From: Fimbriosthenelais zetlandica
Taxonomy: Eukaryota
Direction of reading: 5' to 3'
DNA: 64,000 bases
NCBI GenBank assembly: GCA_977030845.1
Contig: OZ365114.1
Span: 12,586,001 to 12,650,000, forward strand
Part shown: positions 40,300 through 57,783 of the stretch, in pieces
How the letters are laid out: every line of letters begins with the position of its first letter
How positions within the stretch are numbered: position 1 is the stretch's first letter
The notes under the pieces: generated by a model
Told to the model about the DNA's origin: nothing
Databases searched by the model: none
The model's input: the letters and a program-made list of their open reading frames with translations, nothing else
Program-made: the position numbers and the translations under genes

Positions 40300-43200
40300 A
40301 TGGAAGGTTTACCATTTCTCCCAGGCAATACTTTCAGAGACCCAACAGTAAGTCTTGTTCATTTGTAATATATATATTATAACTTTGGGTAGAGTGTCAA
40401 TGTACTGCAGTGCAGAGACTGCAGACTCGGCAGAACCAGTGATGTGTGTGTACTTGCAAAGGTGGTAGACCCTACTCACTACAGTAACTGCTGGTGTTTT
40501 GATTGGGTTCTGGTTGCCCGGTGAAGGCAAGAAGGAAAGAACTACAATCAAACATCTGGATATTGAACATTCTATTTTCTGAAAAAAATGTTTAATTATT
40601 ATATTTTATGGCGGACCCGGAGGGACAGTAGGCAGTGGGCTAGGCAACAACTTGAAAAAGTTGTGACTGTTGTTACAGTGTTACTGTTACTGTTAGATTA
40701 AGATCTAGCTAGTGTTTTAGAAATTGTTCACTGGGTCTCCAGTCTATTCTAACACTAACAGTTAATTCAATGTTGTTCACTAAAATTATTAAATCTGTAG
40801 CCTAGACTAAATTAAAGGTTAGATTTTTTAGAGATTGCTGATTGGGTACAACGTCTTTAATAGGCTATTTGTGAATTGACAATCCTGGGACTGAAAAATG
40901 GTAAAATTTTACTTTTCAGCAAAGTAAATATCATCGGAGCCAAAGTTTAGGATACAGAAATGGCTACGCCCTTCAGACACGCCCCACGGCTGGAATTGGG
41001 GGCGTGGCAATCCCCCAAAACGAGTTGTCGGAGGCGGAGCTAGATGAACTGGCCAACTATAATCCCACCCTTACTTATGGCCAGGCCAAACAGACCCCTC
41101 CCGAGGATTTTGTCCCCGCCCACGTAGCCTGGGACAAAAAGGTAAGTTCATAATATTTCTGAGTGTGTGTGAGAAAGAACTAATTATTTCATAGTACACT
41201 GATCGTTCATACAAGAATAAATCGACCTATTTAGAAATCATTCACCATTTTCATTGTCAATAATTATTAATTCATAATAATTTATTTTTCTCTGTAGGTG
41301 TTGAAGTTTAACGCCTGGTACAAGCAGACTGTCCATGAATCGCCCAAGGAACATTACAGAGTCCGCCATGTTAATATTTATTACTATTTAGAAGATGACA
41401 GTATCTCAGTGGTGGAACCAGTCATTGAAAACTCAGGCATGCCACAAGGTAGGCTTTAACAAATCATAAATGTGTGAAAGCTTAATGTTTTGCAATTAAT
41501 ATGCTTGAATCAAAGCTTGTACAATATGCTTGAATCAAAGCTTGTACAATCATGCTCTGGCATCAGCACGATGGTATACAAGCTTTAGTTTTAAGCTTAA
41601 GTGCAAGAACTATTTAATAATTAAATAATTGACATTTTAACTTGGTCATTATTTTGTTAGTAAATAATTTTGGTTGTTAATTCTCATGCAAATCTTGGCC
41701 AATGTGTCGCAAAATTTTCTATGTTTCTATGAATCAATGTTTCAAACTTACAGGAAAACTGATCAAGAGACAGAGACTTCCCAAGAATGACGTTGGCGAT
41801 CACTGGCACTGGAAAGACATCAATATTGGAACTAACGTCACATTCTATGGCAAGGTGTTCCACCTCAACAACTGTGACCAGTGGACCAGGGTAGGCATAT
41901 CTTGTCATTACTTGTAAACGAATGCCATAAATGGACGTTTTTATTGAAAAAAAAAGTAATAATATATTTTTTTAATATATCCGTTATTTATTTTTATGTG
42001 TAAACTCTTTAATATATTTTTATTTAATGATTATTGTGATTTAATTGTAATTTTGCAGGACTTTTTGGAGAGTGAGGGTATTGAGGTAAACCCGCCTGAG
42101 CCTGCCCCTGAGATACCCAAAGACCCATACACGGAGGCTCGCCGTGAAGCCGCCGCACCACGCACCTACAAAACAGCCTCCGACTTTGACAAACTCAGAC
42201 AGTTCATCAGCATGGACCGCAAAGTACTGCGCTTCTACGCCGCGTGGGATGACAGGGATAACATGTTCGGCGAAATGAGGCAATTCATCATTCATGTGAG
42301 TTTAATTATATTAGTATTCAAATGTGGATTTGACATTTTACTAAAAGAACATCGGAAAATAGGACAAAAATTAAAAAAAAAAAAAAAAAAGAAGAAGAAG
42401 AAGAAAAAAAAAAGTACTAGTACTATCGCCATCTCTTAGAAACAGTTGAATGGCAGTTACTGTAGAACCTTGATTACTGTTAAAATATGTATCTTTCTTA
42501 TGTTTCTTTGGATGTTATTTCTGGTATCTGCTTTATACATGTATGCTTAGTTACTAAGTTAGATTCTCCTTGTTTATATCTACAGTACTACTTGGTTAAT
42601 GACACGGTGGAAATCAGAGAGGTGCACAAAGCCAACGATGGACGAGATCCCTTCCCAGTCCTAATCACAAGACATAAGATTCCCAAGAACAGGTATGCGA
42701 GCATTAAATATTATATAAAAAGAGAAAGAAATTAAGAGAAATGGACAAGAACTTGGGAAAGTGTTGTTTCATAGTTGTTCCTTAATCAGAGGGAGCTATA
42801 TGCAACACCTCAAGAACTTGGGAAATGTCCCTTTTACCAATTAATAGACATGTGATAATTTCTATTTTTAGGTACCAAGTTAATTCCTCTTTCCCTGGAG
42901 TTGTCATGGAGTTGACAGACCAGGAAATCAAGGAATATTTCACACCCCGTGATTTTAATATTGGAGAGACGGTGACCATCTATAACCGTCGCTTCCTCAT
43001 CTATGAAGCTGATGACTTCACCAAGGCATTCTTCTACCAGAACTTCGGCGTCAGGGAGTTCAAGACAGTGGATGTCGGCGGCAACCTCGTTCCTCTTCCC
43101 AAAATGGTAAGTGTTCACACTTCTAAATTATTTGACACTTGAATTATTATAATAACTATGTTCAGTTGATTTGCAATATGTGAGAACGTGCCAAATTAAA

Positions 43201-45353
43201 GTATAAGTGGCATCATATCTGATATAAACACTAATATTATTGAATATACTGTACAACACTTACTTTACAAATTACCTTCAAACAATTGCCCATTGAAGTG
43301 TGACAATGATTTGATATTCTTCAAATCATGGATTTGTGTGTTTCTTTCCATGTCATTCATAAAGGAGGAAGTAAGAATAGTCATGGTCTTTCAATGGGGG
43401 AAATACATTATTCAACATGTTTATACATATGTTATCACCTTAACTCTTTTGAAATAGCCCCATGCTTAATTTGTCCACGCTTTGGTCCAGTGAATTGAAT
43501 TTGTATCATGTATGACGCACCTGAAATTTTAATCTAAAAGTACTCTATACCTTTGGGTGTTTTCATTGAAATCAAAATAACATTGTAAGGACACTTTTAA
43601 AGTTTTGAGATCTGTTTTTCTCATCACAGATCTTGCATTGTACTTAACACATTTCACAGCACAATGTGGTTTTCAACTGTTCACCATTTCCAATGTGCGT
43701 CTTTCCAGTGTTTACAGTCATATTCCTATTTCTTTATTTTGGTTTAGATGTTTTAATAAAGGGATTTTGGTGTGTTTTTTTTTTTAGGAAATTGCCCCAT
43801 ACAATGGTTTTGGATCTCTGGAGGACTCCCTCCAGTCCTGCCTCTCCCTCGTACCTCAGCCTCCCAAAAAGGACTTTATCAAAATGCTGGAGAACGATGG
43901 AAAAGTACTACGCTTCGAGGCCATTCTGGTGAGTCACACTTTGAAGAATGAGATTATAGAAACTCTGATCTCTATAGCTTAGTATAAGGGTTAGATTCAA
44001 ATTTTAATTACCTATCTTGTCTGGTCATATTGACCTTCTCAGGCTAAGTCATAGAAGTTTAAAATACCCTGCTGAAGCGACCACTTTTGGTCAGTCCCGA
44101 AAGTGGTCACTTTAGGAGAGGAGCACTGTACATTTCTCATGGAAATGAACAAACCCATCATTATTTAGTCCCACTTTATTAATCTTAACATTTGTCCACT
44201 GCAGGATTCACCTAAGCCTGAAGACCAGGGACGGAAGTTTATCATCTCGTACCGCCTGTCTGATGACATGATAACCATACACGAGCCTCCTGTAAGGAAC
44301 TCTGGCCGTATTGGGGGTAAGTTCCTGGAGCGGACGCGGGCCGCCAAGCCCAGTTGTCCCCCAGATGCCCCCGCCTTCTACGGTCCCAGTGACTTCTACA
44401 TCGGTGCCGTGGTCCAGGTCTTCTCACATCGGTTTGTCATCACGAACGCTGACGCTTACGTTCTGAAATACATGGAAGAGAACTCTCAGAAATTCCCAGG
44501 TGAGTGTTTTGTAAATTGGTTTTATTTTGGATAAAATTCAAAGAGACAAAGGATTTAAGAGACAAAAGGTTATTTTTGCTTCCAAATTGTCTGCCTTATA
44601 TTATGTGATAACTTTCGTAGATGATTTATAAAGGTATTCATAGCAGTGAAATAGACATAAATATATCTACAGAACTTGCATGCACTTACAAAGAATCCTT
44701 CTTTTCCAGTCTCCACCATCGAGTCATTACGTCAGAAGATTGCTGAGTGTCCGATGGAACCAGAAGATAATAGTCTGAAAGTTCGGCGGTCTCAGAACCC
44801 GGGTGAGCTGCAGATACTGGTGAAGGAGGTTAAGGGCCAGCTGAAGAAGATAGCCATCACAGCCAGTAATAGAAAGGACCAGATGTTCCTCGGTGTCGAC
44901 GCAGACAGACAAGGTTTTATCTCCAAGGAAAACCTCCGCCGATTGTGTGCTAAGCAACACCTGCCTGATGATAGTGACATCATTGATGCCGTGAGTATCT
45001 TTTATGTTAATAGTTAATCAGAGTTTGATATAACCCATTAGGGATTATCTAGGTCAGCTTGATCCATTTTCTAGGCTGGGCATTGGCTGGGAAGTCGGCT
45101 TTAGTCGCCCGTAAAGGTGCTGCCAAAATATGGGTTGTTAAAACTAGTTGAGTGGTGGCACTTAAAGAATGAAGTTCTGTTATTTACACTTTAATCTTTG
45201 TACTGTTTTGGCTTCAAATATAAAATATTTAATTCGAAAAGAAAAACTCAAAAATGTGACATTTTGTTTTTTCAGTTGGCAGCAGAGATCAGCCCCCATG
45301 ACCCTGACCACATCACCCTAGAAGATTTCCGCGTTTTCTTCGAGAGTGCATAA
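40300..45353 (+). CDS. EFHC1: EF-hand domain-containing protein 1 (Rib72/myoclonin-1 family; DM10 domains plus C-terminal EF-hand), 643 aa
   Basis: Exons 40300-40347, 40920-41141, 41298-41448, 41754-41890, 42059-42295, 42586-42692, 42872-43106, 43788-43928, 44205-44499, 44710-44990, 45276-45353; all GT-AG, phases consistent, 1932 nt. Peptides [90 protein letters not shown] and [12 protein letters not shown] match EFHC1 as I recall it; EF-loop [13 protein letters not shown]. Confidence 0.95.
41498..41547 (+). repeat. Perfect 25-bp tandem duplication in EFHC1 intron 3
   Basis: AATATGCTTGAATCAAAGCTTGTAC x2. Confidence 0.9.
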
Positions 45354-46428
45354 ACCCTATCGCACTAAGTCTTAACAAAAAATAAACAAAACTAGTCTGT
45401 GATCATCTAAAATCTATCTACACAATCTATTTATTACCTTCACTTCCAGTCACTTCTGACATGAAAGAAATGTTTTTAAAACAGATGTAGATGTTACATC
45501 TCTGATACAAAATAAATCAAGAATTGTAGCCTAAATAAAGCAAATTTTATGTACTATACTATGCTTCGAGTAAGCTTCAAAATTTAAAATAAAGATATTG
45601 AACTATAGTCTGTACTCTTATATTTTAAAGAAAATTGTATTTAATTTTGTTTTATTGAATAATAATTATTGTCTGAATTCCTTAATGTGTATGTCCATTG
45701 GATATGGTAGTATCTCGTTTGTTGGGAAAAGGTATGGAATTATTTGAAAAGTAATGGAATAATTTACATAATTATGAAAGGGCAAAACCAAGTATTGAAA
45801 GCTACCGTGATAATTATTTGTAAATAAAATCTAGTTGACTGGAGAAGAGAGAAAATGTATGGTGTACTTTTGTCATTTCACTAAATAAAATTATTTCATC
45901 CTCAAGAAATTGTCATTTACTGTATGTACCGGCACACAGTGACCTTAAGCTATGAGAGTAAAACATCACTCTTATTATCGAGCTATGTCAGTTTCGTCTA
46001 AACTCTTGAAATTTAATGACAATGGAAAGCACAAATATCGAAAGATTTCAACACCCAAAAAGCAAGCCAAAACAAAACTTAAAAAATAAATTTGACTTGA
46101 GTCAGATCGATCTTTATTGATAATTCGTCGAGTTTAATAACTTGTTTTATGATACACAATTTGATGAATTTGTACACATCACTGTGCACATGTATTTTTA
46201 CACACCACAGCGCTCTACAGTATCAAGTAGGCCTACACCATCTGTAGGGAATGGTCCTTAGAATCAATGGATATAAATTATAACATGTATACAATTAATT
46301 TATATCTTTTGATTCATGATCACTTCTCTCATATAAATATAATTGATGCCGCAATTTGTAATCTAAACATCCAGGATATAATTCAACATTGGCCCAGAAT
46401 AAATTTCTAATATTATTCACATAATACA

Positions 46429-46992: not shown

Positions 46993-49900
46993 TTATGACG
47001 TCAAATCATCGACGTCATCTTCCTGGGGGCATCCAGTTTGATTGAAGGCCCAGGCCACAAAGTCACACTCACGCTGGTTGGAGAAGAGGGGGAGGTGGAT
47101 GAGACGGACAAGGCCCGACTCCCCACCCACCGCCTGCCACAGGTGGCTGCCCAGGTTAGGGTTCCATTCAACCTAGGGGAAGGGAATAACAGAATGAAAA
47201 TCAGTAAAATCTGGACAAAATGACTATATTGTGTATTTCATTTTTAATGCCTTGTTCCCATAATCCTCGGTTCCTGAGTTTGCATGTTCTTTTAACACAA
47301 ATTGATTTTATTCAAAAGGTGTTATAATGGTGCCTAACTAACGCACTTTAAAAAAGTGCGTTGCGATGGCCCCAGATAAGAATTTCCCTTCAATTCTCCC
47401 TTTAGAATGATACTTACTTTATTTTGGGAGGACAGTAGAGGCCATAGCAAATCTGGTTTTAAGTCTTTAGCAGTGCTAATCTTAGTGCCTTTGCGTAAAT
47501 CGAGATTTTCCTGAAAAAAAGAATTAGAAAATTTACATTTACCAGGCAATGAGCTTCTAAACTTCCCACCTAGTGTCTATCTCTGTTAGTCAAAAGTGAT
47601 TGGCCTAGTGAATTCCCATTAAACTAACCATATTAGCATCACTGAAGACGAGAGTGTACAATTCCATCATTTCTTGAACACTTGCGGGCCGCACTTCAGT
47701 TGTGACTGAGTCCATCTTTTCCATGACTTTCTGTACTGATGATAGGAAGCTGTTGCTATGGCTCTCCGCAGTCTCTGGCCGGGCCTTGCTGGGTGTGGCC
47801 GTCTCTTTATTTTGTGGAGCGTCCATCAGGGGGTGGCGACAACGCGAGCAGACGGCGGAAGTGACGTCACAAACGTCATGTAATGGCGTCTCACAGCGAC
47901 ATGGTTCTAACGGTTCACAGTCCAGTCTGTACAAGACCTGGAGTAATGGAAATACAGTGATAAATTAGATGTTACAAGATGAAGAAACTCCGGAAATGAT
48001 GATTAGATGTATTTTCTTGTATAATCTTCTACTATATTGGTCTAAGCTGAAAGCCAAAAGAAGAGGAAAACCTACCATTCGCCTGGATGTGAAGGACTTG
48101 TGATTCTTATGAACAGAGAGAAGGAAGGGTAGAAACATTCCTTCCACAGTGCCAGCACTGTCCACTGAAACCAGGGTGTTCAGCCAGTCGGAAAAACTCA
48201 GATCCTGAAACAAAAATGTGTAGTGTAATGTGCAAATCCTCAAGCTCTCCAATTACTTTCATGGTTGCCTTTTCTGTGGGATAAAGTTCCCATGTGAGCC
48301 ATGCTTTGAGCAGCTTATCATTTAGTTGCCCTGACTGAAATTATTCATCAAAATATCCTAATAGAGTGCAGATCTATGGTCTTGAGATGCCTTCAAAATA
48401 TATGAAAAAAGGAGGCATACTTACATTAATACAAGCATTATGGACCGTCAATGGCCGGTTTTGTAGGCCAAAGTACCCAGCATCGAACAAGTAGACAGCA
48501 TTGTGCTCCAAGCTAGAAGGATGGAGAAATCTTATTAAATGATGTTATTAAAAGCTTGGTTCACTTTGGTATTACTACGCCTATACCTTTGGAGAGAACG
48601 AACAGCTGTATTCAAAACCATGGATCTTTGGACTTGTTAAATATTTAAAATTCAACAGGTGTTTAAATAATTAAATTTCCCTCACCTATAACAGTTGTCA
48701 CAACCGCCCATTGTGACTGGCCAGTGGAGGGGCCAGCAGGCTGTAGTGAACTCTGATTTTCCGAGAACATTCACTGGTAAATGGAGATACTCTGTGTTCC
48801 ACACCTTCATAGACCTGTAATAGATGGTTTGTTTGTTTGGTTTAACATTTATTTTACGTACAGTCAACAATTTCACTGGCCTCAAATTCAAGTCAATCAA
48901 CTGCCAGTGCCCCTAGCCAGCCCCCAAAAGAGTTTTTGAGGTGTTGTATAAGCCTATGGCTCCACCTGGAACAATATTACACTTACCTGTCTTGACTGGT
49001 AGTGGTAAAGAACTGCGGCCTTCTCTGGTTGACAGACACAGTGGTGATGGCTCCATGCTGAGCATTAAATGTCATGGCTGGATGGATGCGCAAGCCGTCC
49101 TTAGTCTCTACCCGGAGCAGCGGCGACGTCGTGCCAATGTCATAGATGGCGACTATGCCGTCAACGTACCCAGCAAATATACGTGTCGATCCGTCCAAAT
49201 ACTGCCAGTCAAGACATAAACAAACCTCTAATTTACCTGCAAAAGATCGTATTATAAGTTAAAGTTAATACAATAAAGGATTTTTCTATAAAGTAGCAGA
49301 CACTAAATTTCAAATTTAGCAGTCTAGGTCAGTTTGACAAATTGGTTACATAAATATGTTACTCACTGTCCATAGTAGCTGTGTAGGGCACCAGGGTAAG
49401 GGCAGGATCGACACTGAACACTGAAAGCTTGGCAGATTTGCCTACACCCAAACTACTAGGCTTTGGAATACTGAAAGGGATTACATAGAACAATTCAATT
49501 CTGTTCCAAAAATGCATAATGTTTCAAAGGAGGATAATGCATTTCAAACTTTCTTGCTAGATTCTGAAAGCTTTCTGAAAATCTGGATTCTCCAGTGCTG
49601 CAACGAATCCAATAATTGATTATCCAATTATCATCATTGTCTTACCTGTATATTTTTATTTTACCAGAGCTGGTAGCAACAGCCAGGAAGCCCAGTAAGG
49701 GTAGGTGTGAATCGTCAGCATCGTAACTGCGGCGCGGGCACCACTTCATGTCCCATACAGGCCCGTCTGGTTCCACCAGTACTAGACTCAGCTTCGGTGC
49801 TTTGGCTAAGGTCCTGTACAATTATAATTTCCAAAATTCAGATTCAAAATATTCACTGAAACGACCAAACTAAAACTTCAAGGGGTAGGCTCCACTGAAA

Positions 49901-52900
49901 CGACCAAACTAAAAATTCAAGGGGTAGGCTTCACTGAAACGACCAAACTAAAACTTCAAGGGGTAGGCTTCACTGAAACGACCAAACTAAAACTTCAAGG
50001 GGTAGGCTTCACTGAAACGACCAAACTAAAATGTCAAGGGGTAGGCTTCACTGAAACGACCAAACTAAAACTTCAAGGGGTGAACTTCACTGAAACGACC
50101 AAACTAAAGTTCAGGGGGTGGACTTCACTGAAACGACCAAACTAAGATTCAAGGGGTAGACTTCACTGAAACGAACAAACTAAGATTCAAGGGGTAGACT
50201 TCACTGAAACGACCAAGTTGCTAAAGCAGCTCACTAGGAAATCATCCCCTGTGACAAGTACTTTACCAATATTGGTGAGATTTTCATTATTACTTTGAAT
50301 AATTATTCTGAATACTTACCCGTCTGTCATGGTACCAAAGGCCCAGAGTTGGATGGCTGCGGGTGAGGGGGAGGCCTTCATGATGCTGTGATGTTTGTCG
50401 TACAGTCGGTTAGCGTATATAGCCAGGTACTGGTTAGACATGATGCCATCACGGCGAGGTAACCAGGCCATGGACCGCACAGGCCCTCCGGCATACAGGA
50501 TGTTAATATCTGTAAATATTAGCAGTTTTTTAAGGCCTTCCTCCATGCACTTCTGCAGTTTAAGATTAGTTATTCCTGTTGGTTTTTGTTGTTCTGGAAG
50601 TTCCAATAAATATATTTTTGAAAAATGACTTACCATCTGTCGTACTGCCGAAGCGGGGCAAGTATTTGGCCTCACTTTTAGTCTCCCCTTTCTGGTCTTC
50701 AAGTATCTTCCGGCAGAACCAAGGTGAAAACTCTGACTGAGGTAAAATCTTTTCCGATTCACTATAGAAAAAGTATGGTCAAATTTCATTAGATTGTTTT
50801 AACTGGACCCGAGTAGCACAAGCCATAAAGCCATGAGCAGTAATGTCGGATACCCTGTAAAAGCTAAGATAAGTGATCAGATGGAGCTGGTTTCATTGTG
50901 TTCTCACCTATCATCCAGCCTCCTCCAGTCCTTGGCCTGTGTCCTCCAGTTGTTGAAGAGTGTCATGTCTGTTTGTTGGTGGTTTGCTCGCCAGTTTAGC
51001 GTCCAGCTCAGTGTATGTACCAGCTCTAGTCGTTCCTGAGCCCCAGCTCCAGAATGTCGACGCTGAATGCTGGCTGAACGTACAGCCCTGCCCACCTTAA
51101 AGTTACGCTTCTCTGTGAACAGACGAAACAGACCAAGAATGAATATTTCTTTAAGTTATAGTCAGCAGTCAGTTATCTCAGGGTGAAAAGGAAATTCTTG
51201 TAGGGCCAAAAAAAGTTGGCCAAAATGATAATTCTTACTTTTCTTTGGTGTTTTCTCTAATTCGCTCTCATCCCAGTCAGAATCCTTGTTGTCAGATTCT
51301 GCTGCAGCTGCAGCCTCTGCTTCTACTTTGAATTCGATGTCCTCCTCAGGTTTGACATCCTGTAATAAAAAAGTCACATTGAAAATGTCACGTCACGCTA
51401 GATAACGCTAGGCTTGTCTGGACACTTTTATGTATACTTATAGGGACAGAGAAATAAGCTTACCCAGTTATGTTTAGCAGCATGGTTGATAGCCTCCTCC
51501 TCTGTCGCTGATCTGTCTTTACACCGTGAACACTCGTAGTAAGGCATGTACTGAGGTCTAAACTCACACACAGGGTAATGTGCTACGATGCCCTCCAAGC
51601 ACTCAAACACTTCCTTACACTGAATTACAAAGCATGTCAAGAAAATTTCAATATAAATGTCCAATCAAATTATTAGAATTACAGGCCACCTTTCCGAAAT
51701 ATAGTTTTTTGTAATTGTAATGAAAATATAGGCTTTTAGGTTTTTATAGGTATTCCAAAAGAAATATCATTGGGACGAAGACAATTTTGTCTCAAAAACA
51801 TTAACAGAATGTAGGAAAGTTTGTGAATAACTCACATTAAGAAAATGTAAACTTACCATAGTGTAAGGACATGAGACCTCTTTAAGGGCATCAATATCTT
51901 TTTGCCACTTTTGTTTGAAGTATTTTGTAACTGGTTTTAATCGAGCTTCCACTAGTCTGTACTTGCCCTAACAGATATAAAACACATTACATTCGTTTTC
52001 TTTGAAAAAGATACAATTCCAAATCAAATCTGTTCGTACTTAATGTAAAAATACAAAAAGAAGTCCTTACTGGGGCTTTCTTCCCCCTTTTCGGAGTCGC
52101 CTCTTGTACTGCAGTCCCTGCTGAGGCACTGGCTTCAGGTCCCATTTTCCTTATAAAAGTCTGAATGTTGTTTCTTGCTCTGTGAATACAAAATATATTT
52201 AAAAAATTTAGGTCTATGTGTGTGGAAGGTTTATCAAGGTTTAGCATTCAATGTTATAAGCCATTCACTAAATAGTAAACTTACTTTGCCGCTGCAGATC
52301 TACTACACCTTGCACTTGCATCAAGACTCGTATCACTGATGTTCTGATCCTGGAGGACTGACCAGTCTGCTAAAGGGTTGTGGATATTATCCATGGAGGT
52401 ATCCGGATCGAGGACAGCCGAGGTCGAAAGCAATAAACTTCCATCACCACCCTCCAACCTGCCAATTCATTTATAGTTTTTTTAAGTTTTATTTTCTCAC
52501 AACTTCACAGAAAGTCAACGCCAATTCAATTCTCTATAGGTAGCCAACATGGCTTTTTTGTTGTGACATATATATTTAGGTTTATAATTTCAGAAAGGTT
52601 GAAATAGTTTAATTTCCATTATAGATTCATCAATCAGTTGCATAAAAGAGTTGCATCAACGTTAGCATCTTAATTATGGCATCTTAACCTACCCAGTGCC
52701 ATCACTGCCTTCTGGAGCCATTGAGCATTTCTTCAAATGTGTAAGTATAAATCTTTTGGCAAACACCCGTCCACAATAAGGGCATGGCATATGATTAATC
52801 TGAAACATAATCAACATAAAAACAAGCTAAATAGCTGATTCAGGGAGTTGCTTCAGTTGGTCCCAGCTACAGCCAATCGGACGATTACGAACGGTTGGAT

Positions 52901-54938
52901 ATGAGACCGTTTAAAAGTTGAGCCATTCAAGAAAATGAAAAGAAAAACTTACCATGGGTATTCCTTCTGGAGTGCAGACCTGTGGTAATTTATCTGTAAT
53001 CTTGCCTTTCCTATGGCTCCCGGGCTTCCTTTTATTAGGCTGAGGCGTCGAGGTCGAACAAGGGAGCGACAAGTCCAAGGCATCACTTTCCAGATCCAAT
53101 ATACTACCTTTAGTTTCAAGGCCTATGGACGGTTCACTTTGCCCCTGTTCAGGCTCAGTTACCCCTTTGAGCCCTGGGGGTCTGAGAGTGAGCTTTTGAC
53201 TTCCTATGTATTTTTGAGGTAGGATTTGGATGACTGACTCACTCATCTGGGACAGGGAAGTATCGGTCTCTCCCTGTAATAGTTCTGATTGATCTATCTG
53301 AACCTCATCAGTCTCTAGCCTCATACTTTCACTTTCTGTTTCAATCACCCTCTGAGGCATCCTACCCTTTCTCTTTCTCTTGGGCGGTCTCCCTCTTTTC
53401 TTTTTCCTAGGGAGTTCCCCATCCCCTGGGGAGGTTTCCCTCGAGCCCCCGACTTCCCCCTGACCCCTGTCTCCACCCTCCATGGAATGTGCACCTTCAG
53501 AAACATTGCTCTGTATATCAGCCCCGTCCTCTTCTGTGTACCTTCTCTTCGGGGGTCGCCCTCTCTTCCTCTTCCCTGTGGTCACCGCTCCCTCAGGAGT
53601 CGGGCTGATGCTAGGTCCACTCTGTACACTGACTGGGGTGGTGGACCTCGACCTCCTACCCCTCTCTGAACCTTCCACGCTCACTGGGGTCCGGGACCTA
53701 GCTCGCCCCTTCTTTGCCTTCGTCTCTGTTGGCATGTCCGTATCAGGAAGGCTAACTGGTGTGCTAGCCCTCGACCCACGACCAGTCCCTCTAGTGACCG
53801 ACCCATCCCGACTAACTGGAGTGCTTGACCGAGACCTACGTGCCCTCTCTGACCCTCCCTCAGTAACAGACCCATCTATAGGTTTTATTTCAGATTTCCC
53901 AGACCCCGTCTCGGCCACTGCACCCTCAGTCACCCTCTTCTTCTGTGGACGCCCTCCACCTTTCTTCTTTGACGCAACCTCAGCTTTTCTCTTCGTTCCC
54001 CCTTCCCCCTTGGATGCTCTTCCCTGAGCCCGTGAGGCTCGCCTAGAGAGCCCTCCTTCTTCCCTCTCTTCCCCGAACATGTCCACCAATGAGGATATGG
54101 CATCTTCCACGACACTTTTCGTCTCTGTGCCCACTTCAGGCGTGCTTAAGGAAGCCAGCAGTTTGTGGGTCGTTTCTATGGAGGTTTCCTCCTTGTAGCC
54201 ATCAGGTAGGTCTACTTGGTCCGCCCTGGCAGATCCACCTTGGGCTAATGGGGAACCCACAGCGGTCTTCACATGTCTTCTTGTCCGTCTTGGGGACTTA
54301 CTATTAATGAAAAAATGAGGTAAGTCTCAATTTTGAGTGAGCTCTGATATATGGCAAATATTATGAAACTAAGACACTAGTTAGGGACAAGTTGGCAGCA
54401 ACCCAATTCTCCGCTTTTATTCATTTTTCAAATTCCCTGATTTTTCGGTAACTATTTTTTATAGAAAAAGGGTAAACTATTTCTCTGACTCCTTGATTTT
54501 CCAGCATGGCTTAAAGCCGCGCTATGGGGAGACTCCCTGTACAAGGAAATGATCAGTGATAGAGTCCCTTTAAAACTTTAAGACAAAAGCCCACTTACTC
54601 CTGTCCCTGGTTTGCTGTAGCAGCGATGACTCGCACCATGGTACCAGACGTTTTTGTGACATAGCCGCGCCCACTAGATCGCTGATGCACTTTGTATACA
54701 GTCCTCGGAGTGTATTTTTTATCCCGCAATGGAGTAAAATCATTTTCTTTAATGTACTCAACGGTGATCTGCATGAATGTAGGAAGAATATTATGTGGTT
54801 ATTTGAGGAAAATTTTGCGAAATAATTATTTTTTTTACACATCAAAATGAATGAAATCGTACTATTTAAAAAAAAATGACTTACCTCTGTGGGTCTCGAG
54901 GAATCAGATCCCTCTGTAGACGCTTGTTTGTCTGCCAT
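46993..54938 (-). CDS. GTF3C2: General transcription factor IIIC subunit 2 (TFIIIC110)-like WD40 protein with long AT-hook/zinc-finger N-terminus, ~1440 aa
   Basis: Coding exons 5' to 3': 54885-54938, 54599-54768, 52953-54300, 52693-52799, 52285-52458, 52071-52179, 51857-51967, 51464-51619, 51239-51359, 50908-51112, 50634-50761, 50320-50509, 49646-49813, 49367-49470, 48987-49236, 48686-48814, 48425-48512, 48076-48204, 47629-47937, 47418-47510, 46993-47172; GT-AG, continuous frame, 4323 nt. TFIIIC110-type motifs: YAGGPVRSMAWLP..QYLAI..IQLWAFG, GPVWDMKWCP..LGFLAVATSSGKIKIY, VEWNPNLGSHLWQAVGGESGLVRL. Confidence 0.88.
49852..50216. repeat. 39-bp intronic VNTR in GTF3C2, ~9.4 units
   Basis: Unit TTCACTGAAACGACCAAACTAAAACTTCAAGGGGTAGGC, with variants clustered by position. 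Confidence 0.95.
54515..54569. mobile_element. Internally deleted Kolobok-like remnant in a GTF3C2 intron
   Basis: TTAA|AGCCGCGCTAT ... ATCAGTGATAGAGTCCCT|TTAA; left end degenerate. Confidence 0.45.
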
Positions 54939-56059
54939 GCTTTTTTTCCCTATTAGATGGGTCTTCTATACTTCAGTCTTCATGAATGAGCCTATAGCAT
55001 TCTTATCCAATCTGAAATGAATAATAGGCAGGTCTACTGGTAAGCTAGGGGGTAGGCCTAGATGGTATTTAATAAATTTAATCAATTTAATCAGTTTTCA
55101 AATTTATAAATAAAACTATTTAAAAAAAAAAATAGGGCCTACGGTACCAGGTAATTCACAAATTATTTAGTAGTTTATATATCCCTATTTTAGCCTAGCC
55201 TAGTACCTAGATCAAGATTTAAAATTGATGAAAATATTACAAATTTAGGTCAAAAATATTTTTATAAAATAAATCTGTTTAAATATTAATTGTTGTCATA
55301 TGACTCAAACATTTATATAACAGGTATTCAATGTGAAAAAGTATTTCGTGCAACATAATATTATTCCAATGTGCAAAAATTATAAAGGTGACATGACCGG
55401 GATTCGAACTCACGACTCACAAAGCACAGATAGTAGGCCGCCGCATGCATCGATTCCCAGAGAAGACACGGGATGTCAACGACAACGTGGGTTCGAACCC
55501 CCCGGGGATGGCAAATTTCAATGCAGAATTTTGAGGAAGGCTAAACATTTAGGGCTTGTGCCCGTCCTTTCTTTATACACAGTTGCTTAAAATGGGTGAC
55601 TCTACGACTGTCAAGTGACAAGTCAAGACCTAAATTATCGATAAATAGATTCTTGTCGTATACATACAACTACAAGATTTAAAAAAGCACCTACTTTTTC
55701 CGTAAATCTTCAATGTACGACCATATATAGTAGCACGGGGGATGAAATGTAATTCTCGCATTGATATTAGTAAATTCCAGTCAACGTGGGGAACGCACAG
55801 AAGTGGAATTCCATTCTGTCAACAGGCAAAAACAACCGTCATGTACCAATGGCGGTTCGATCCGACGACCCTCCGCTTACCCCAAGTCTCGGACACACCG
55901 TGAACTATTTTACCTAATTATCTTTTATGTATCATGAAAAGGTTAATTATTGCTATATTAATAATGATAACATGTATTTATTATGATATGCAATACCTAA
56001 TTGGACTGTAAACGTATATTTCAGTTGGAATTTAAGTTTTGTATTGGTTAGTCTCGCTT

Positions 56060-56370: not shown

Positions 56371-56619
56371 TTAATCGAAAGTTTATTCTCTTCTGCTACA
56401 ACTATAAACTGTTGAAGTTAGCTGCTAGGCCTACAACTTAATAAGTGAGCTCAGGTCTAATTTTCAATATATAGAATGTCACATTCTCTAACAATTTGTG
56501 TTACCTTACACAATAAATTCATAATCAATATTGAATATCTCCTTGAGACAGTTGAGTGAACATACCTTTTAAAATCCACTTATCTACTTCAACACTTTAT
56601 CAAATCCAGAGTGAAGATT

Positions 56620-57783
56620 ATGGCAGCTCCTAATCCGTCGTCTGGGATTCCCCAGCCCAGGATGTACCCTCCTCCAGTCGCCTCTCAACCCCCAGCAGCT
56701 CCACAACAACAGCAACAAGCCCCACAACAACAGCCCCCTCCGCAACAGCCACAGCAGCCAACACACATGTCCTCCCCGACTAAAGATGTCAACACTATCG
56801 CCTTCTGTCGGATAGGTCAGGAGTTCGTGCAGGACATTGTGCAAAAGACTGCGGAGATTTTTGGCATTCTTAAAAGTATTCAGGTAATTATTAGGCTACT
56901 AAATTTATTGAACACCTGATGAAAAAAGAATTTTACAGACCCGAGCTCTTGAAATTCTACTGAGGTTTTACTATATATTTTAGTATGTCTTTAAGTTTTT
57001 ATTGATTTATTTTGTATTTTATTTTTCAGTTGCCGAATGAGGTCAACCAAGGACTACCGGCTTATCAAGAACGAAAGAACAAATTGGATGAGAACATTCG
57101 CAACGTGACTCTGACCTTCAAAAAACTGAGGATTGTGTATGACAAAGTTAACGAACAAACTACACCACTCCACCATAAACCTGTTGAGGTGAGGATATAT
57201 ATCAGGAATTTTTTTTAAAAATAACCTTATTCACATCTATCTATCATTTCATCCCTCCAACTTGCCTTGCCAACTATCACTGTACTGCCTTTATGTTAAA
57301 TTAAAAAAAATTATGCCCAAATTTTACAATTTTAAAAATTAATAAATAAAACTAATTCTTTTTTCAGGATATGCTTCCCATTGAGGAAAATGGAGAAATA
57401 CACGGAGACCGGCCCAAGCAAACAGAGGCCCTGAAATACGTGAGTGAAGAACACAGGGAAGTGGTGGAGGTAAGGGAAATACTAATTTGAAATTATTCCC
57501 AGTAGAGTGATCTCTATTGATCTACTAAGTCTTGATATTTTTTAATAATTAATTTAAAAGCGATACAGAATAAAATTAATCCATACAAATGAAATATCAA
57601 GCATCGAGAGGTTAAACAGGTTCATATGGCTATATTAAATTTCCCCTATAAAAATAGTCACATTATCATAATTATTTCTTGCAGCAACTGGAGTTACGTA
57701 ACCGACAGTTAAAAGAAATTATAGATCAACTACGTACTATCATCTGGGAAATTAACACTATGATGGCCATGCGAAGAACGTAG
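56620..57783 (+). CDS. MED30: Mediator complex subunit 30, 207 aa, with P/Q-rich N-terminus
   Basis: Exons 56620-56883, 57030-57188, 57368-57469, 57685-57783 (all phase 0, GT-AG). DVNTIAFCRIGQEFVQDIVQKT..QLPN and NRQLKEIIDQLRTIIWEINTMMAMR match MED30 hallmarks; AATAAA ~160 nt after the stop. Confidence 0.95.

What the first reader, a model, noticed from the sequence alone, without database searches (positions are those of the whole stretch)
51464..54300. TFIIIC110 (GTF3C2) joined to a ZNF512-like zinc-finger/AT-hook module: possible ancestral fusion of two genes that are separate in vertebrates
Seen: ahead of the WD40 region the spliced ORF carries AT-hook cores (KRKRGRPPKRR, KKKRGRPPKRKRK, GRPQK), a C2HC finger CPYC-x11-H-x3-C, the motif RSAAAKARNNIQ, a second C2HC finger KWQKDIDALKEVSCPYTMCKEVFECLEGIVAHYPVC and a C2H2 finger CSRC-x12-H-x3-H. 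From memory (verify): human ZNF512 contains RRSAKIAVYHLQ followed by [36 protein letters not shown], the same KW..DI......CP...C..V......G..AH...C pattern. ZNF512/512B use atypical C2HC fingers for heterochromatin targeting. Human GTF3C2 (~910 aa) lacks these fingers, and I recall GTF3C2 and ZNF512 both lying on 2p23.3. Inference: an ancestral TFIIIC subunit carried its own DNA/chromatin-targeting module that later split off as ZNF512, which would link TFIIIC insulator function to heterochromatin.
Basis: partly seen in the sequence, partly recalled or inferred. Interest (0 to 1): 0.8.

Follow-up and report, generated by a model that had tools for sequence, protein, structure and literature searches.

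The report
TFIIIC110 gene with ZNF512-type fingers
This invertebrate's gene for a core RNA polymerase III factor (TFIIIC110/GTF3C2) still carries the AT hooks and zinc fingers that vertebrates keep in a separate gene, ZNF512 (right next door in fish), which points to the origin of the supposedly vertebrate-only chromatin proteins ZNF512 and ZNF512B.

Summary
All the motifs are present, and they lie in one minus-strand gene. Nineteen GT-AG exons (54300-46993) give one open frame of 1356 aa. Its order is three AT hooks, a lone C2HC finger, an 'RSAA' motif, a C2HC+C2H2 finger pair, a linker and the GTF3C2 WD40 propeller.

- All 15 invertebrate GTF3C2 orthologues mapped (arthropods, molluscs, a bryozoan, echinoderms, amphioxus, two unnamed) carry fingers ahead of the propeller, and most show the motif. 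None of the 14 vertebrate orthologues does, hagfish included.
- A profile built only from invertebrate GTF3C2 finger regions scores a teleost ZNF512 at 185 bits, collinear over three finger pairs plus the motif. It scores the window's region at 69 bits.
- In three distant teleosts, znf512 lies immediately 5' of gtf3c2 on the same strand, 2-6 kb away.
- Teleost znf512 shares four phase-0 intron positions with amphioxus GTF3C2.
- The correction: both vertebrate genes keep the RSAA motif. The history is therefore better read as tandem duplication with reciprocal domain loss than as a clean split.

Caveats: no RNA runs were listed for this genome. The window's own fingers are diverged (Pfam ZNF512_C2HC 22.6 bits, below the cut-off of 27; no pairwise ZNF512 hit).

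The parts
54885..54938 (-). Tentative first coding exon (ATG, 18 codons, GTAAGT donor)
   Evidence: Sequence reading. Joined frame is open. No homology or RNA support.
54599..54768 (-). Tentative second coding exon (170 nt, ends in phase 2 and fits the acceptor at 54302/54301)
   Evidence: No Pfam hit. Unsupported otherwise.
52953..54300 (-). Large exon A: disordered, basic and serine-rich region with three AT-hook cores (53960-53934, 53573-53541, 53405-53367)
   Evidence: RGRP cores found by pattern. Orthologues also carry AT hooks.
52693..52799 (-). Exon B: lone C2HC finger CPYC-x11-H-x3-C (52784-52725). Probably the remnant of an upstream finger pair.
   Evidence: Pfam zf-C2HC_2 E 0.0024. 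Position relative to orthologues' pairs 1 and 2.
52071..52458 (-). Exons C (52458-52285) and D (52179-52071): RSAA motif SRSAAAK|ARNNIQTFIRKM, split by a phase-2 intron inside the K codon
   Evidence: The motif aligns with invertebrate and vertebrate GTF3C2 and with teleost ZNF512. The same intron position and phase occur in amphioxus GTF3C2 and seahorse gtf3c2.
51464..51967 (-). Exons E (51967-51857) and F (51619-51464): tryptophan-led ZNF512-type C2HC finger split by a phase-0 intron (CPYTM|C), followed by a C2H2 finger. This is 'finger pair 3'. Both exons are phase 0 to 0, so they could be skipped in frame.
   Evidence: Pfam PF21276 E 8.6e-5, profile positions 2-37 of 38. Orthologue alignment. 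Profile score 69.3 bits.
50634..51359 (-). Exons G, H, I: acidic linker and the conserved pre-propeller segment (DW..L..SE...LP...S), also present in vertebrate GTF3C2
46993..50509 (-). Exons J to S: GTF3C2/TFIIIC110 WD40 propeller and C-terminal segment, with stop codon at 46995-46993
   Evidence: model. Exon M against human GTF3C2 8cli_C 585-650, E 2e-4. BLAST 177-257 bits to named full-length GTF3C2 orthologues.

Best explanation
The window holds the orthologue of GTF3C2 (TFIIIC110, yeast tau91). This is the WD40 subunit of the B-box-binding tauB module of the RNA polymerase III factor TFIIIC. The gene here keeps the ancestral bilaterian layout.

Layout: ahead of the propeller, one polypeptide carries a DNA-binding arm. 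The arm is made of AT hooks, C2HC+C2H2 zinc-finger pairs of the kind now named after ZNF512, and a short RSAA motif between the pairs. This species keeps three AT hooks, one lone C2HC finger, the motif and one complete pair.

Likely function (inferred): the propeller sits in tauB next to the B box, as in the human structure. The arm adds contacts to flanking DNA or chromatin, and possibly self-association, as the same finger pairs do in ZNF512B.

History: in the vertebrate stem lineage the gene, or its 5' half, was duplicated in tandem. The upstream copy kept the fingers and has no propeller; it became ZNF512, and ZNF512B is its paralogue. The downstream copy lost the fingers and kept the motif and propeller; it became GTF3C2.

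Shown here: the gene model, orthology, finger homology, collinearity, shared introns, adjacency in teleosts, and the absence of fingers from vertebrate GTF3C2. Inferred: expression as one mRNA in this species, DNA binding by the arm, and the order of evolutionary events.
For: One gene:
- 19 GT-AG exons give one frame.
- The finger pair lies between the RSAA motif and the pre-propeller segment, both of which vertebrate GTF3C2 also has.
- Single alignments span motif, fingers and propeller in Chamberlinius, Branchiostoma, Anneissia, Antedon, Vespa and Megalopta.
- The phase-2 intron inside the motif is shared with amphioxus GTF3C2 and seahorse gtf3c2.

Ancestral layout:
- All 15 invertebrate orthologues mapped have fingers ahead of the propeller. 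All 14 vertebrate ones, including two hagfishes and two sharks, have none (names).

ZNF512 kinship:
- Pfam PF21276 is the top hit for the window (E 8.6e-5).
- Amphioxus pair 3 scores 39.6 bits against a cut-off of 27.
- Starfish PF21367 scores 28.6 bits.
- The best PDB hits of the starfish region are ZNF512B and ZNF512, and ZNF512 is the best PDB hit of the invertebrate profile.
- The nearest ESM Atlas clusters are 'Zinc finger protein 512'.
- Seahorse ZNF512 scores 157 bits against amphioxus GTF3C2 in one collinear stretch, and 185 bits against the invertebrate-only profile across positions 7-263 of 271.
- In a tree, ZNF512 falls within the deuterostome GTF3C2 finger regions (support 85/91).

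Gene-level descent:
- Four phase-0 intron positions are shared by teleost znf512 and amphioxus GTF3C2.
- The order znf512 then gtf3c2, on the same strand and 2-6 kb apart, is seen in Hippocampus, Paramormyrops and Synaphobranchus.
- The two genes lie in one 417-kb interval in man (PMC2570409).

Duplication rather than a clean cut:
- ZNF512 carries SGRVKRVSAQVAIFHLQEIASEE. Human GTF3C2 carries [24 protein letters not shown].

Function by analogy:
- ZNF512B has four C2HC+C2H2 pairs that are needed for DNA binding and oligomerisation (PMC11602157).
Against: - No transcript evidence for this species: no RNA run could be listed.
- The window's finger pair alone does not hit the solved ZNF512/ZNF512B fragments (E above 0.4) or seahorse ZNF512 by phmmer.
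- Its Pfam score (22.6 bits) is under the curated cut-off. Its C2H2 finger does not hit PF21367.
- In the tree it sits on a very long branch.
- The intron inside its C2HC finger is one codon away from the one in seahorse znf512 pair 3, and amphioxus pair 3 has none there.
- Teleost znf512 lacks the phase-2 intron in the motif.
- Adjacency was seen only in teleosts. The shark, bowfin and bird look-ups gave no answer on the upstream side.
- No non-bilaterian orthologue, no tunicate and no cyclostome ZNF512 was examined.
- My seahorse ZNF512 model has 578 aa against the 594 aa of the annotated gene.
Confidence: 0.8

Rival explanations
1. Clean gene fission. The ancestral finger-plus-propeller gene was simply cut in two in the vertebrate stem, with no duplication. 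The 5' half became ZNF512 and the 3' half became GTF3C2.
For: The order and orientation in teleosts (znf512 immediately 5' of gtf3c2, same strand) are exactly what a fission leaves behind. ZNF512 is collinear with the N-terminal half of invertebrate GTF3C2.
Against: In invertebrates the RSAA motif lies between finger pairs 2 and 3. After a single cut it could end up in only one product. Both ZNF512 and vertebrate GTF3C2 have it, in very similar form. Vertebrate GTF3C2 also shows what looks like an internal deletion of pair 3 between two retained segments. Both hagfish GTF3C2 proteins carry two copies of the motif, which fits a duplication.
Confidence: 0.1
2. The window holds two neighbouring genes, a zinc-finger gene and GTF3C2, that were wrongly joined by reading open frames. 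Alternatively, the main mRNA starts downstream and lacks the fingers.
For: No RNA evidence is available. Exons E and F are both phase 0 to 0, so they could be skipped without breaking the frame. Merged gene models do occur in this family, for example the Patella 'mucin-2' model.
Against: There is no stop codon, and every junction across 19 exons has a consensus splice site. The fingers are flanked on both sides by segments present in human GTF3C2. The intron in the motif is shared with amphioxus and fish GTF3C2. The same layout appears in all 15 invertebrate protein models mapped, which come from several sources, NCBI among them.
Confidence: 0.05
3. The likeness to ZNF512 is only the general likeness of C2H2/C2HC fingers. 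There is no special kinship, or the fingers were acquired independently.
For: The window's fingers score under Pfam's cut-off and give no pairwise ZNF512 hit. In the profile search of the PDB, generic C2H2 proteins follow ZNF512 closely.
Against: Teleost ZNF512 and amphioxus or profile GTF3C2 align collinearly at 157-185 bits across three pairs, the linkers and the motif. They share intron positions. The genes are adjacent in teleosts. ZNF512 families rank first in Pfam, in the PDB and in the ESM Atlas.
Confidence: 0.02

Closest known systems
Human GTF3C2 / TFIIIC110 (PDB 8CLI chain C; yeast tau91/Tfc6)
   Same: WD40 propeller, RRAA motif and pre-propeller segment. By orthology, presumably the same place in tauB beside TFIIIC90 and the TFIIIC220 winged helices, with DNA contact downstream of the B box (PMC11811891).
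   Different: Between residues 115 and 430 of the PDB chain, the human protein has no zinc finger and no RGRP AT-hook core. None of the 14 vertebrate orthologues has a finger. The window protein is about 450 residues longer at the N-terminal side and carries a Cys-rich insertion in exon Q.
ZNF512 and ZNF512B (vertebrate C2HC+C2H2 pair proteins; Pfam PF21276 and PF21367; PDB 2CTD and 2GQJ)
   Same: The same finger grammar: a tryptophan-led atypical C2HC finger followed by a C2H2 finger. The same RSAA motif ahead of the last pair, and the same order of parts.
   Different: ZNF512 and ZNF512B have no propeller. ZNF512B has four pairs and a NuRD-binding motif and is described as vertebrate-specific (PMC11602157). 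The window protein has only one complete pair plus one lone C2HC finger. Its fingers are too diverged for a pairwise hit.
Invertebrate GTF3C2 models: Branchiostoma lanceolatum 'GTF3C2' (P0046), Acanthaster planci XP_022103592.1, Anneissia japonica XP_033100677.1, Haliotis asinina XP_067665899.1, and hymenopteran, millipede, barnacle and bryozoan models
   Same: The same overall layout: fingers, RSAA motif and propeller, with AT hooks in most. The window shares the intron inside the motif with amphioxus. Its CEFRPQ junction between the two fingers resembles the arthropod form.
   Different: Deuterostome orthologues keep up to three complete pairs. The window keeps one and a half. Identity is only about 25-31%. 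Most of these models are annotated only as 'uncharacterized protein', and I found no paper describing the layout.

Membership tests
GTF3C2 / TFIIIC110 (tau91) orthologues | C-terminal WD40 propeller homologous to that of human GTF3C2 | tested here: met
   Exon M against 8cli_C residues 585-650, E 2e-4, best PDB hit. BLAST 177-257 bits over 400-840 residues to the full-length proteins named GTF3C2, from fish, sharks, hagfish, amphioxus and insects.
GTF3C2 / TFIIIC110 (tau91) orthologues | Conserved RRAA motif and pre-propeller segment upstream of the propeller, in the same order | tested here: met
   Alignment of 18 species. Human sequence shown. The phase-2 intron in the motif is shared with amphioxus and seahorse.
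GTF3C2 / TFIIIC110 (tau91) orthologues | Assembly into tauB with TFIIIC90 and TFIIIC220, and a role in Pol III transcription | not testable with these tools
   Needs biochemistry. Inferred from orthology only.
Pfam PF21276 ZNF512_C2HC finger | Score at or above Pfam's gathering cut-off (27 bits) | tested here: inconclusive
   The window's spliced finger scores 22.6 bits, E 8.6e-5. It is the top family and covers profile positions 2-37 of 38, but it is under the cut-off. The amphioxus finger at the matching place scores 39.6 bits. A profile of invertebrate orthologues scores the window at 69 bits and teleost ZNF512 at 185 bits.
Pfam PF21367 ZNF512_zf-C2H2 finger | The C2H2 partner finger matches the ZNF512 C2H2 model | tested here: not met
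   No PF21367 hit for the window's C2H2 finger at E up to 1. Starfish pair 1 does pass (28.6 bits). PF21367 matches the C2H2 of pair 1 in the starfish, and the window has no pair-1 C2H2.
ZNF512-type finger pair (architecture) | Atypical C2HC finger directly followed by a typical C2H2 finger, as described for ZNF512B | tested here: met
   C-x4-C-x12-H-x3-C, then 11 residues, then C-x2-C-x12-H-x3-H. The grammar is described in PMC11602157.
ZNF512-type finger pair (architecture) | Significant direct pairwise similarity to vertebrate ZNF512 or ZNF512B | tested here: not met
   The window pair against the PDB: no ZNF512 hit, best E 0.46 to an unrelated protein. Seahorse ZNF512 phmmer does not report the window model. 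The link is by profile and through orthologues only.
ZNF512 / ZNF512B gene family (stand-alone finger proteins) | A protein made of finger pairs without a propeller | tested here: not met
   The window protein continues into the GTF3C2 propeller. It is the GTF3C2 orthologue and should not be filed as a ZNF512 gene.
AT-hook motif | RGRP core flanked by basic residues; Pfam PF02178 | tested here: inconclusive
   Two textbook cores (KRKRGRPPKRR and KKKRGRPPKRKRK) and one weaker core were found by pattern. Pfam reported nothing for the exon. The crinoid orthologue's AT hook scores 17.0 bits against a cut-off of 17.4.

The most novel reading that the evidence does not exclude
ZNF512 and ZNF512B are the detached DNA- and chromatin-binding arm of TFIIIC110. 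The RSAA motif, kept by both lineages, would be a docking element for a common partner, for instance within TFIIIC/tauB. If so, vertebrate ZNF512 proteins would still work at TFIIIC-bound sites (tRNA genes, SINEs, extra-TFIIIC sites). Vertebrates would have turned a built-in module of a Pol III factor into separately regulated subunits that link those sites to heterochromatin and NuRD.
Probability: 0.2. Interest if true: 0.8.

Novelty: new variant of a known kind. Interest (0 to 1): 0.68.

Why it matters
TFIIIC110 has been studied in yeast and man, where it is described as a propeller with a disordered N-terminus. The data here indicate that the ancestral animal protein also carried AT hooks and up to three ZNF512-type finger pairs, and that most invertebrates still have them.

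This gives ZNF512 and ZNF512B an origin. The literature calls ZNF512B vertebrate-specific (PMC11602157). These proteins appear to be paralogues of the N-terminal half of GTF3C2, born by tandem duplication and reciprocal domain loss before the vertebrate radiation.

Several questions become testable:
- What does the finger arm do for TFIIIC in invertebrates (extra DNA contacts, clustering of tRNA genes, boundary function)?
- What does the shared RSAA motif bind?
- Do ZNF512 proteins retain any functional tie to Pol III loci?

It is also a clean, datable example of subfunctionalisation by domain partition.

Tried and rejected
- RNA evidence: two searches for RNA runs (the 4.8-kb stretch, and the large exon alone) listed nothing.
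- Single exons E and F against the PDB gave only chance hits, such as apolipoprotein A-I. The finger is split by an intron, so it must be spliced before searching.
- Word-index protein search with the starfish finger region found only the query itself.
- The same search with an amphioxus plus human-fragment alignment was swamped by low-complexity words. It returned only a Branchiostoma floridae fragment. Full-length ZNF512 could therefore not be fetched that way. It was obtained from teleost loci next to gtf3c2 instead.
- My brute-force exon search for seahorse znf512 gave wrong models. It was replaced by a homology-guided model of 578 aa, against 594 aa annotated.
- Exact spliced mapping on the amphioxus locus failed because the locus differs from the protein record. 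Junctions were read by hand.
- I hoped the window's intron inside the pair-3 C2HC finger would be shared. It is not present in amphioxus pair 3, and it is one codon off in seahorse znf512.
- Look-ups for Mustelus and Amia found no record. The catshark gene range was too long. The tinamou contig ends at the gene's 5' end.
- B-box-like strings upstream of the gene were checked as tRNA or other RNA: nothing by ARAGORN or Rfam.
- The organism could not be identified. The closest fragments are unnamed.
- A paper on TFIIIC subunit similarities (PMC514540) concerns the B-block binding (largest) subunit, not TFIIIC110.

Full report
**What is in the window.**
The region lies in an animal genome with short exons and GT-AG introns. 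On the minus strand I built a gene model of 19 exons, labelled A to S, running from 54300 to 46993.
- Every junction has an AG acceptor and a GT donor.
- The frame stays open for 1356 codons and ends at a TAA at 46995-46993.
They would give 1440 aa. Nothing else supports them.
- The neighbours are a MED30 gene diverging upstream and a DM10/EF-hand (EFHC-like) gene converging downstream. The gene is therefore bounded on both sides.

**Check of the observation.**
- three AT-hook cores in exon A;
- a C2HC finger in exon B;
- RSAAAK|ARNNIQ joined across the C/D intron;
- a tryptophan-led C2HC finger split by a phase-0 intron between exons E and F;
- a C2H2 finger in exon F.

Downstream, exon M has human GTF3C2 (PDB 8CLI chain C, residues 585-650) as its best PDB hit, E 2e-4. 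The whole model gives 177-257 bits to the full-length proteins named GTF3C2.

**One gene or two.**
No RNA runs could be listed, so the argument is comparative.
- A search of 1.84 billion representatives with exon M, and a word search with the starfish propeller, brought in orthologues. These come from echinoderms, amphioxus, molluscs, Hymenoptera, a millipede, a barnacle and a bryozoan, plus 14 vertebrates (names).
- Single BLAST alignments of the window model run from residue about 516-526 (the RSAA motif), through the fingers, into the propeller. This holds for the millipede, amphioxus, two crinoids and two Hymenoptera (a wasp and a bee).
- In a multiple alignment, the window's finger pair lies between two segments that vertebrate GTF3C2 also has. 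Upstream is the motif (human [24 protein letters not shown]). Downstream is the pre-propeller segment.
- The motif is interrupted by a phase-2 intron at the same residue in the window, in amphioxus GTF3C2 and in seahorse gtf3c2.

Two neighbouring genes joined by mistake cannot explain fingers embedded inside GTF3C2-specific sequence.

**Distribution of the fingers.**
A pattern map and an alignment of finger regions show a common plan in invertebrates:
- AT hooks in most;
- up to three pairs of a C2HC finger followed by a C2H2 finger;
- the RSAA motif between pairs 2 and 3 (seen in most);
- then the propeller.

Deuterostome invertebrates keep up to three pairs (the starfish two). Arthropods keep about two. 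The window keeps a lone C2HC finger plus pair 3. None of the 14 vertebrate orthologues has any finger, including two hagfishes and two sharks. Eleven of them show the motif under at least one of two patterns. The human sequence printed from the PDB confirms this for residues 115-430.

**Are the fingers of the ZNF512 kind?**
For the window itself the evidence is at profile level.
- The spliced pair has Pfam ZNF512_C2HC as its top family (E 8.6e-5, 22.6 bits, profile positions 2-37 of 38). The curated cut-off is 27.
- It gives no significant hit to the solved ZNF512 or ZNF512B fragments.
- It gives no hit to a teleost ZNF512 by phmmer.

For the orthologues the evidence is strong.
- Amphioxus pair 3, which lines up with the window's pair in the alignments, scores 39.6 bits.
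- The starfish C2H2 finger passes ZNF512_zf-C2H2 at 28.6 bits.
- The starfish finger region has ZNF512B (2GQJ, E 1.7e-11) and ZNF512 (2CTD, E 6e-8) as its two best PDB hits.
- A profile of 14 invertebrate finger regions has ZNF512 as its best PDB hit.
- The nearest ESM Atlas clusters are 'Zinc finger protein 512', recorded from chordates only.

**The decisive link came from gene neighbourhoods.**
- The locus of seahorse gtf3c2 shows a 594-aa gene immediately upstream, on the same strand, 2 kb away. That gene carries PF21276 and PF21367.
- The same arrangement is found in Paramormyrops (4 kb gap) and Synaphobranchus (6.3 kb gap). These represent three deep teleost lineages.
- I rebuilt the seahorse protein from the locus. 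It is 58% identical to the human ZNF512 fragment 2CTD, so it is znf512.
- It aligns with amphioxus GTF3C2 in one collinear stretch of 157 bits (residues 138-463 against 289-598). It scores 113-123 bits against crinoids and 90 bits against the starfish.
- A profile built only from invertebrate GTF3C2 finger regions scores it at 185 bits across positions 7-263 of 271. That span includes pair 2, the motif and pair 3. The same profile scores the window at 69.3 bits over the motif and pair 3.
- Teleost znf512 and amphioxus GTF3C2 share four phase-0 intron positions:
  - four residues before the C2H2 finger of pair 1;
  - after that finger;
  - inside the C2HC finger of pair 2 (C-x3|G-C);
  - two residues after the last cysteine of the pair-3 C2HC finger.
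- In a tree of finger regions, ZNF512 falls with the deuterostome GTF3C2 sequences (support 85/91). The window sits on a long branch near arthropods, and that placement is unsure.
- In man the two genes lie in one 417-kb interval with ten genes between them (PMC2570409).

**How the split happened.**
The teleost order and orientation would fit a simple fission. However, ZNF512 has its own copy of the motif (SGRVKRVSAQVAIFHLQEIASEE in Paramormyrops), very like the one in vertebrate GTF3C2. In invertebrates the motif lies between pairs 2 and 3. A single cut therefore cannot leave it in both products.

I read this as a tandem duplication of the gene, or of its 5' half, in the vertebrate stem, followed by reciprocal loss. 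The upstream copy kept the fingers and has no propeller. The downstream copy lost the fingers.

Hagfish GTF3C2 has no fingers, so the loss predates the cyclostome split, unless hagfish lost them independently. Both hagfish proteins carry the motif twice, which fits a duplication but is not proof. ZNF512B would be a later paralogue. That last point is inference.

**How it probably works.**

The N-terminal arm combines two elements. AT hooks bind the minor groove of AT-rich DNA (established knowledge). The finger pairs, in ZNF512B, are required for DNA binding, oligomerisation and chromatin compaction (PMC11602157).

The most likely role is extra anchoring of TFIIIC to flanking DNA or chromatin, and perhaps bridging between bound sites. 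This is inference. All eight zinc ligands of pair 3 are kept in nine orthologues across four phyla, which argues that the pair is functional.

**Novelty.**
Full-text searches found no paper that links GTF3C2 and ZNF512 other than as neighbours at the GCKR locus. They also found no paper describing fingers in invertebrate TFIIIC110. ZNF512B is described as vertebrate-specific. The protein models are public, mostly labelled 'uncharacterized protein', and the amphioxus record already carries the Pfam domain. The facts are therefore latent in databases, but I did not find the reading in print. Earlier notes of this scan hold nothing on it.

**Limits.**
- No transcript data for this species.
- The organism is unknown.
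- The window's own fingers are diverged.
- Adjacency is shown only in teleosts.
- No non-bilaterian, tunicate or cyclostome ZNF512 data.
- My seahorse ZNF512 model differs by 16 residues from the annotated length.

Noticed in passing
window 49852-50216: A 39-bp unit repeated 9.4 times (93% matches) fills much of the intron between exons J and K of the GTF3C2 gene.
   Followed up: partly
window 56611-57218 (+) and 41000-45400 (+): The neighbouring genes are MED30, diverging from the GTF3C2 5' end, and a DM10/EF-hand (EFHC-like) gene converging on its 3' end. Neither matches the fish or human neighbours of GTF3C2.
   Followed up: partly
window 55400-55560: Strings resembling tRNA T-arm/B-box sequence (ggttcgaaccc, gagttcgaatcccgg) lie upstream of the TFIIIC subunit gene. 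ARAGORN and Rfam find no RNA gene there. They are probably decayed tRNA-derived repeats.
   Followed up: yes
window 47629-47937 (exon Q): The propeller carries a Cys-rich insertion (DCEPLEPCRCETPLHDVCDVTSAVCSRCRHP), followed by a low-complexity stretch. There is no Pfam hit. In the orthologues this part of the alignment is variable or broken.
   Followed up: no
P0037 (Myxine glutinosa) 257 and 521; P0056 (Eptatretus burgeri) 251 and 504: Both hagfish GTF3C2 proteins carry the RSAA/RKAA motif twice, about 255-265 residues apart, with no fingers between. This may be a trace of the 5' duplication that gave rise to ZNF512.
   Followed up: partly
L002 21154-28861; L004 6165-15090; L003 32459-34789; L005 38586-39627: In seahorse and tinamou, gtf3c2 is followed by a cation-efflux (ZnT-type) gene on the opposite strand, then a PRK/UPRTase (UCKL1-like) gene. 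The other two teleosts show the first of these. From memory, unverified: human UCKL1 lies next to ZNF512B on 20q13.33 and SLC30A3 lies near GTF3C2 on 2p23.3. That would fit paralogous regions left by whole-genome duplication.
   Followed up: no
P0023 (Patella vulgata 'mucin-2', 3357 aa): This public model appears to merge a GTF3C2 orthologue (fingers at about 2480-2550, motif at 2605, propeller to the end) with a long upstream part. It is probably an annotation merger.
   Followed up: partly
window exons E (51967-51857) and F (51619-51464): Both finger exons are phase 0 to 0 and multiples of three (111 and 156 nt). Skipping or losing them would leave the frame intact. That gives an easy route to a finger-less form like the vertebrate one.
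   Followed up: no
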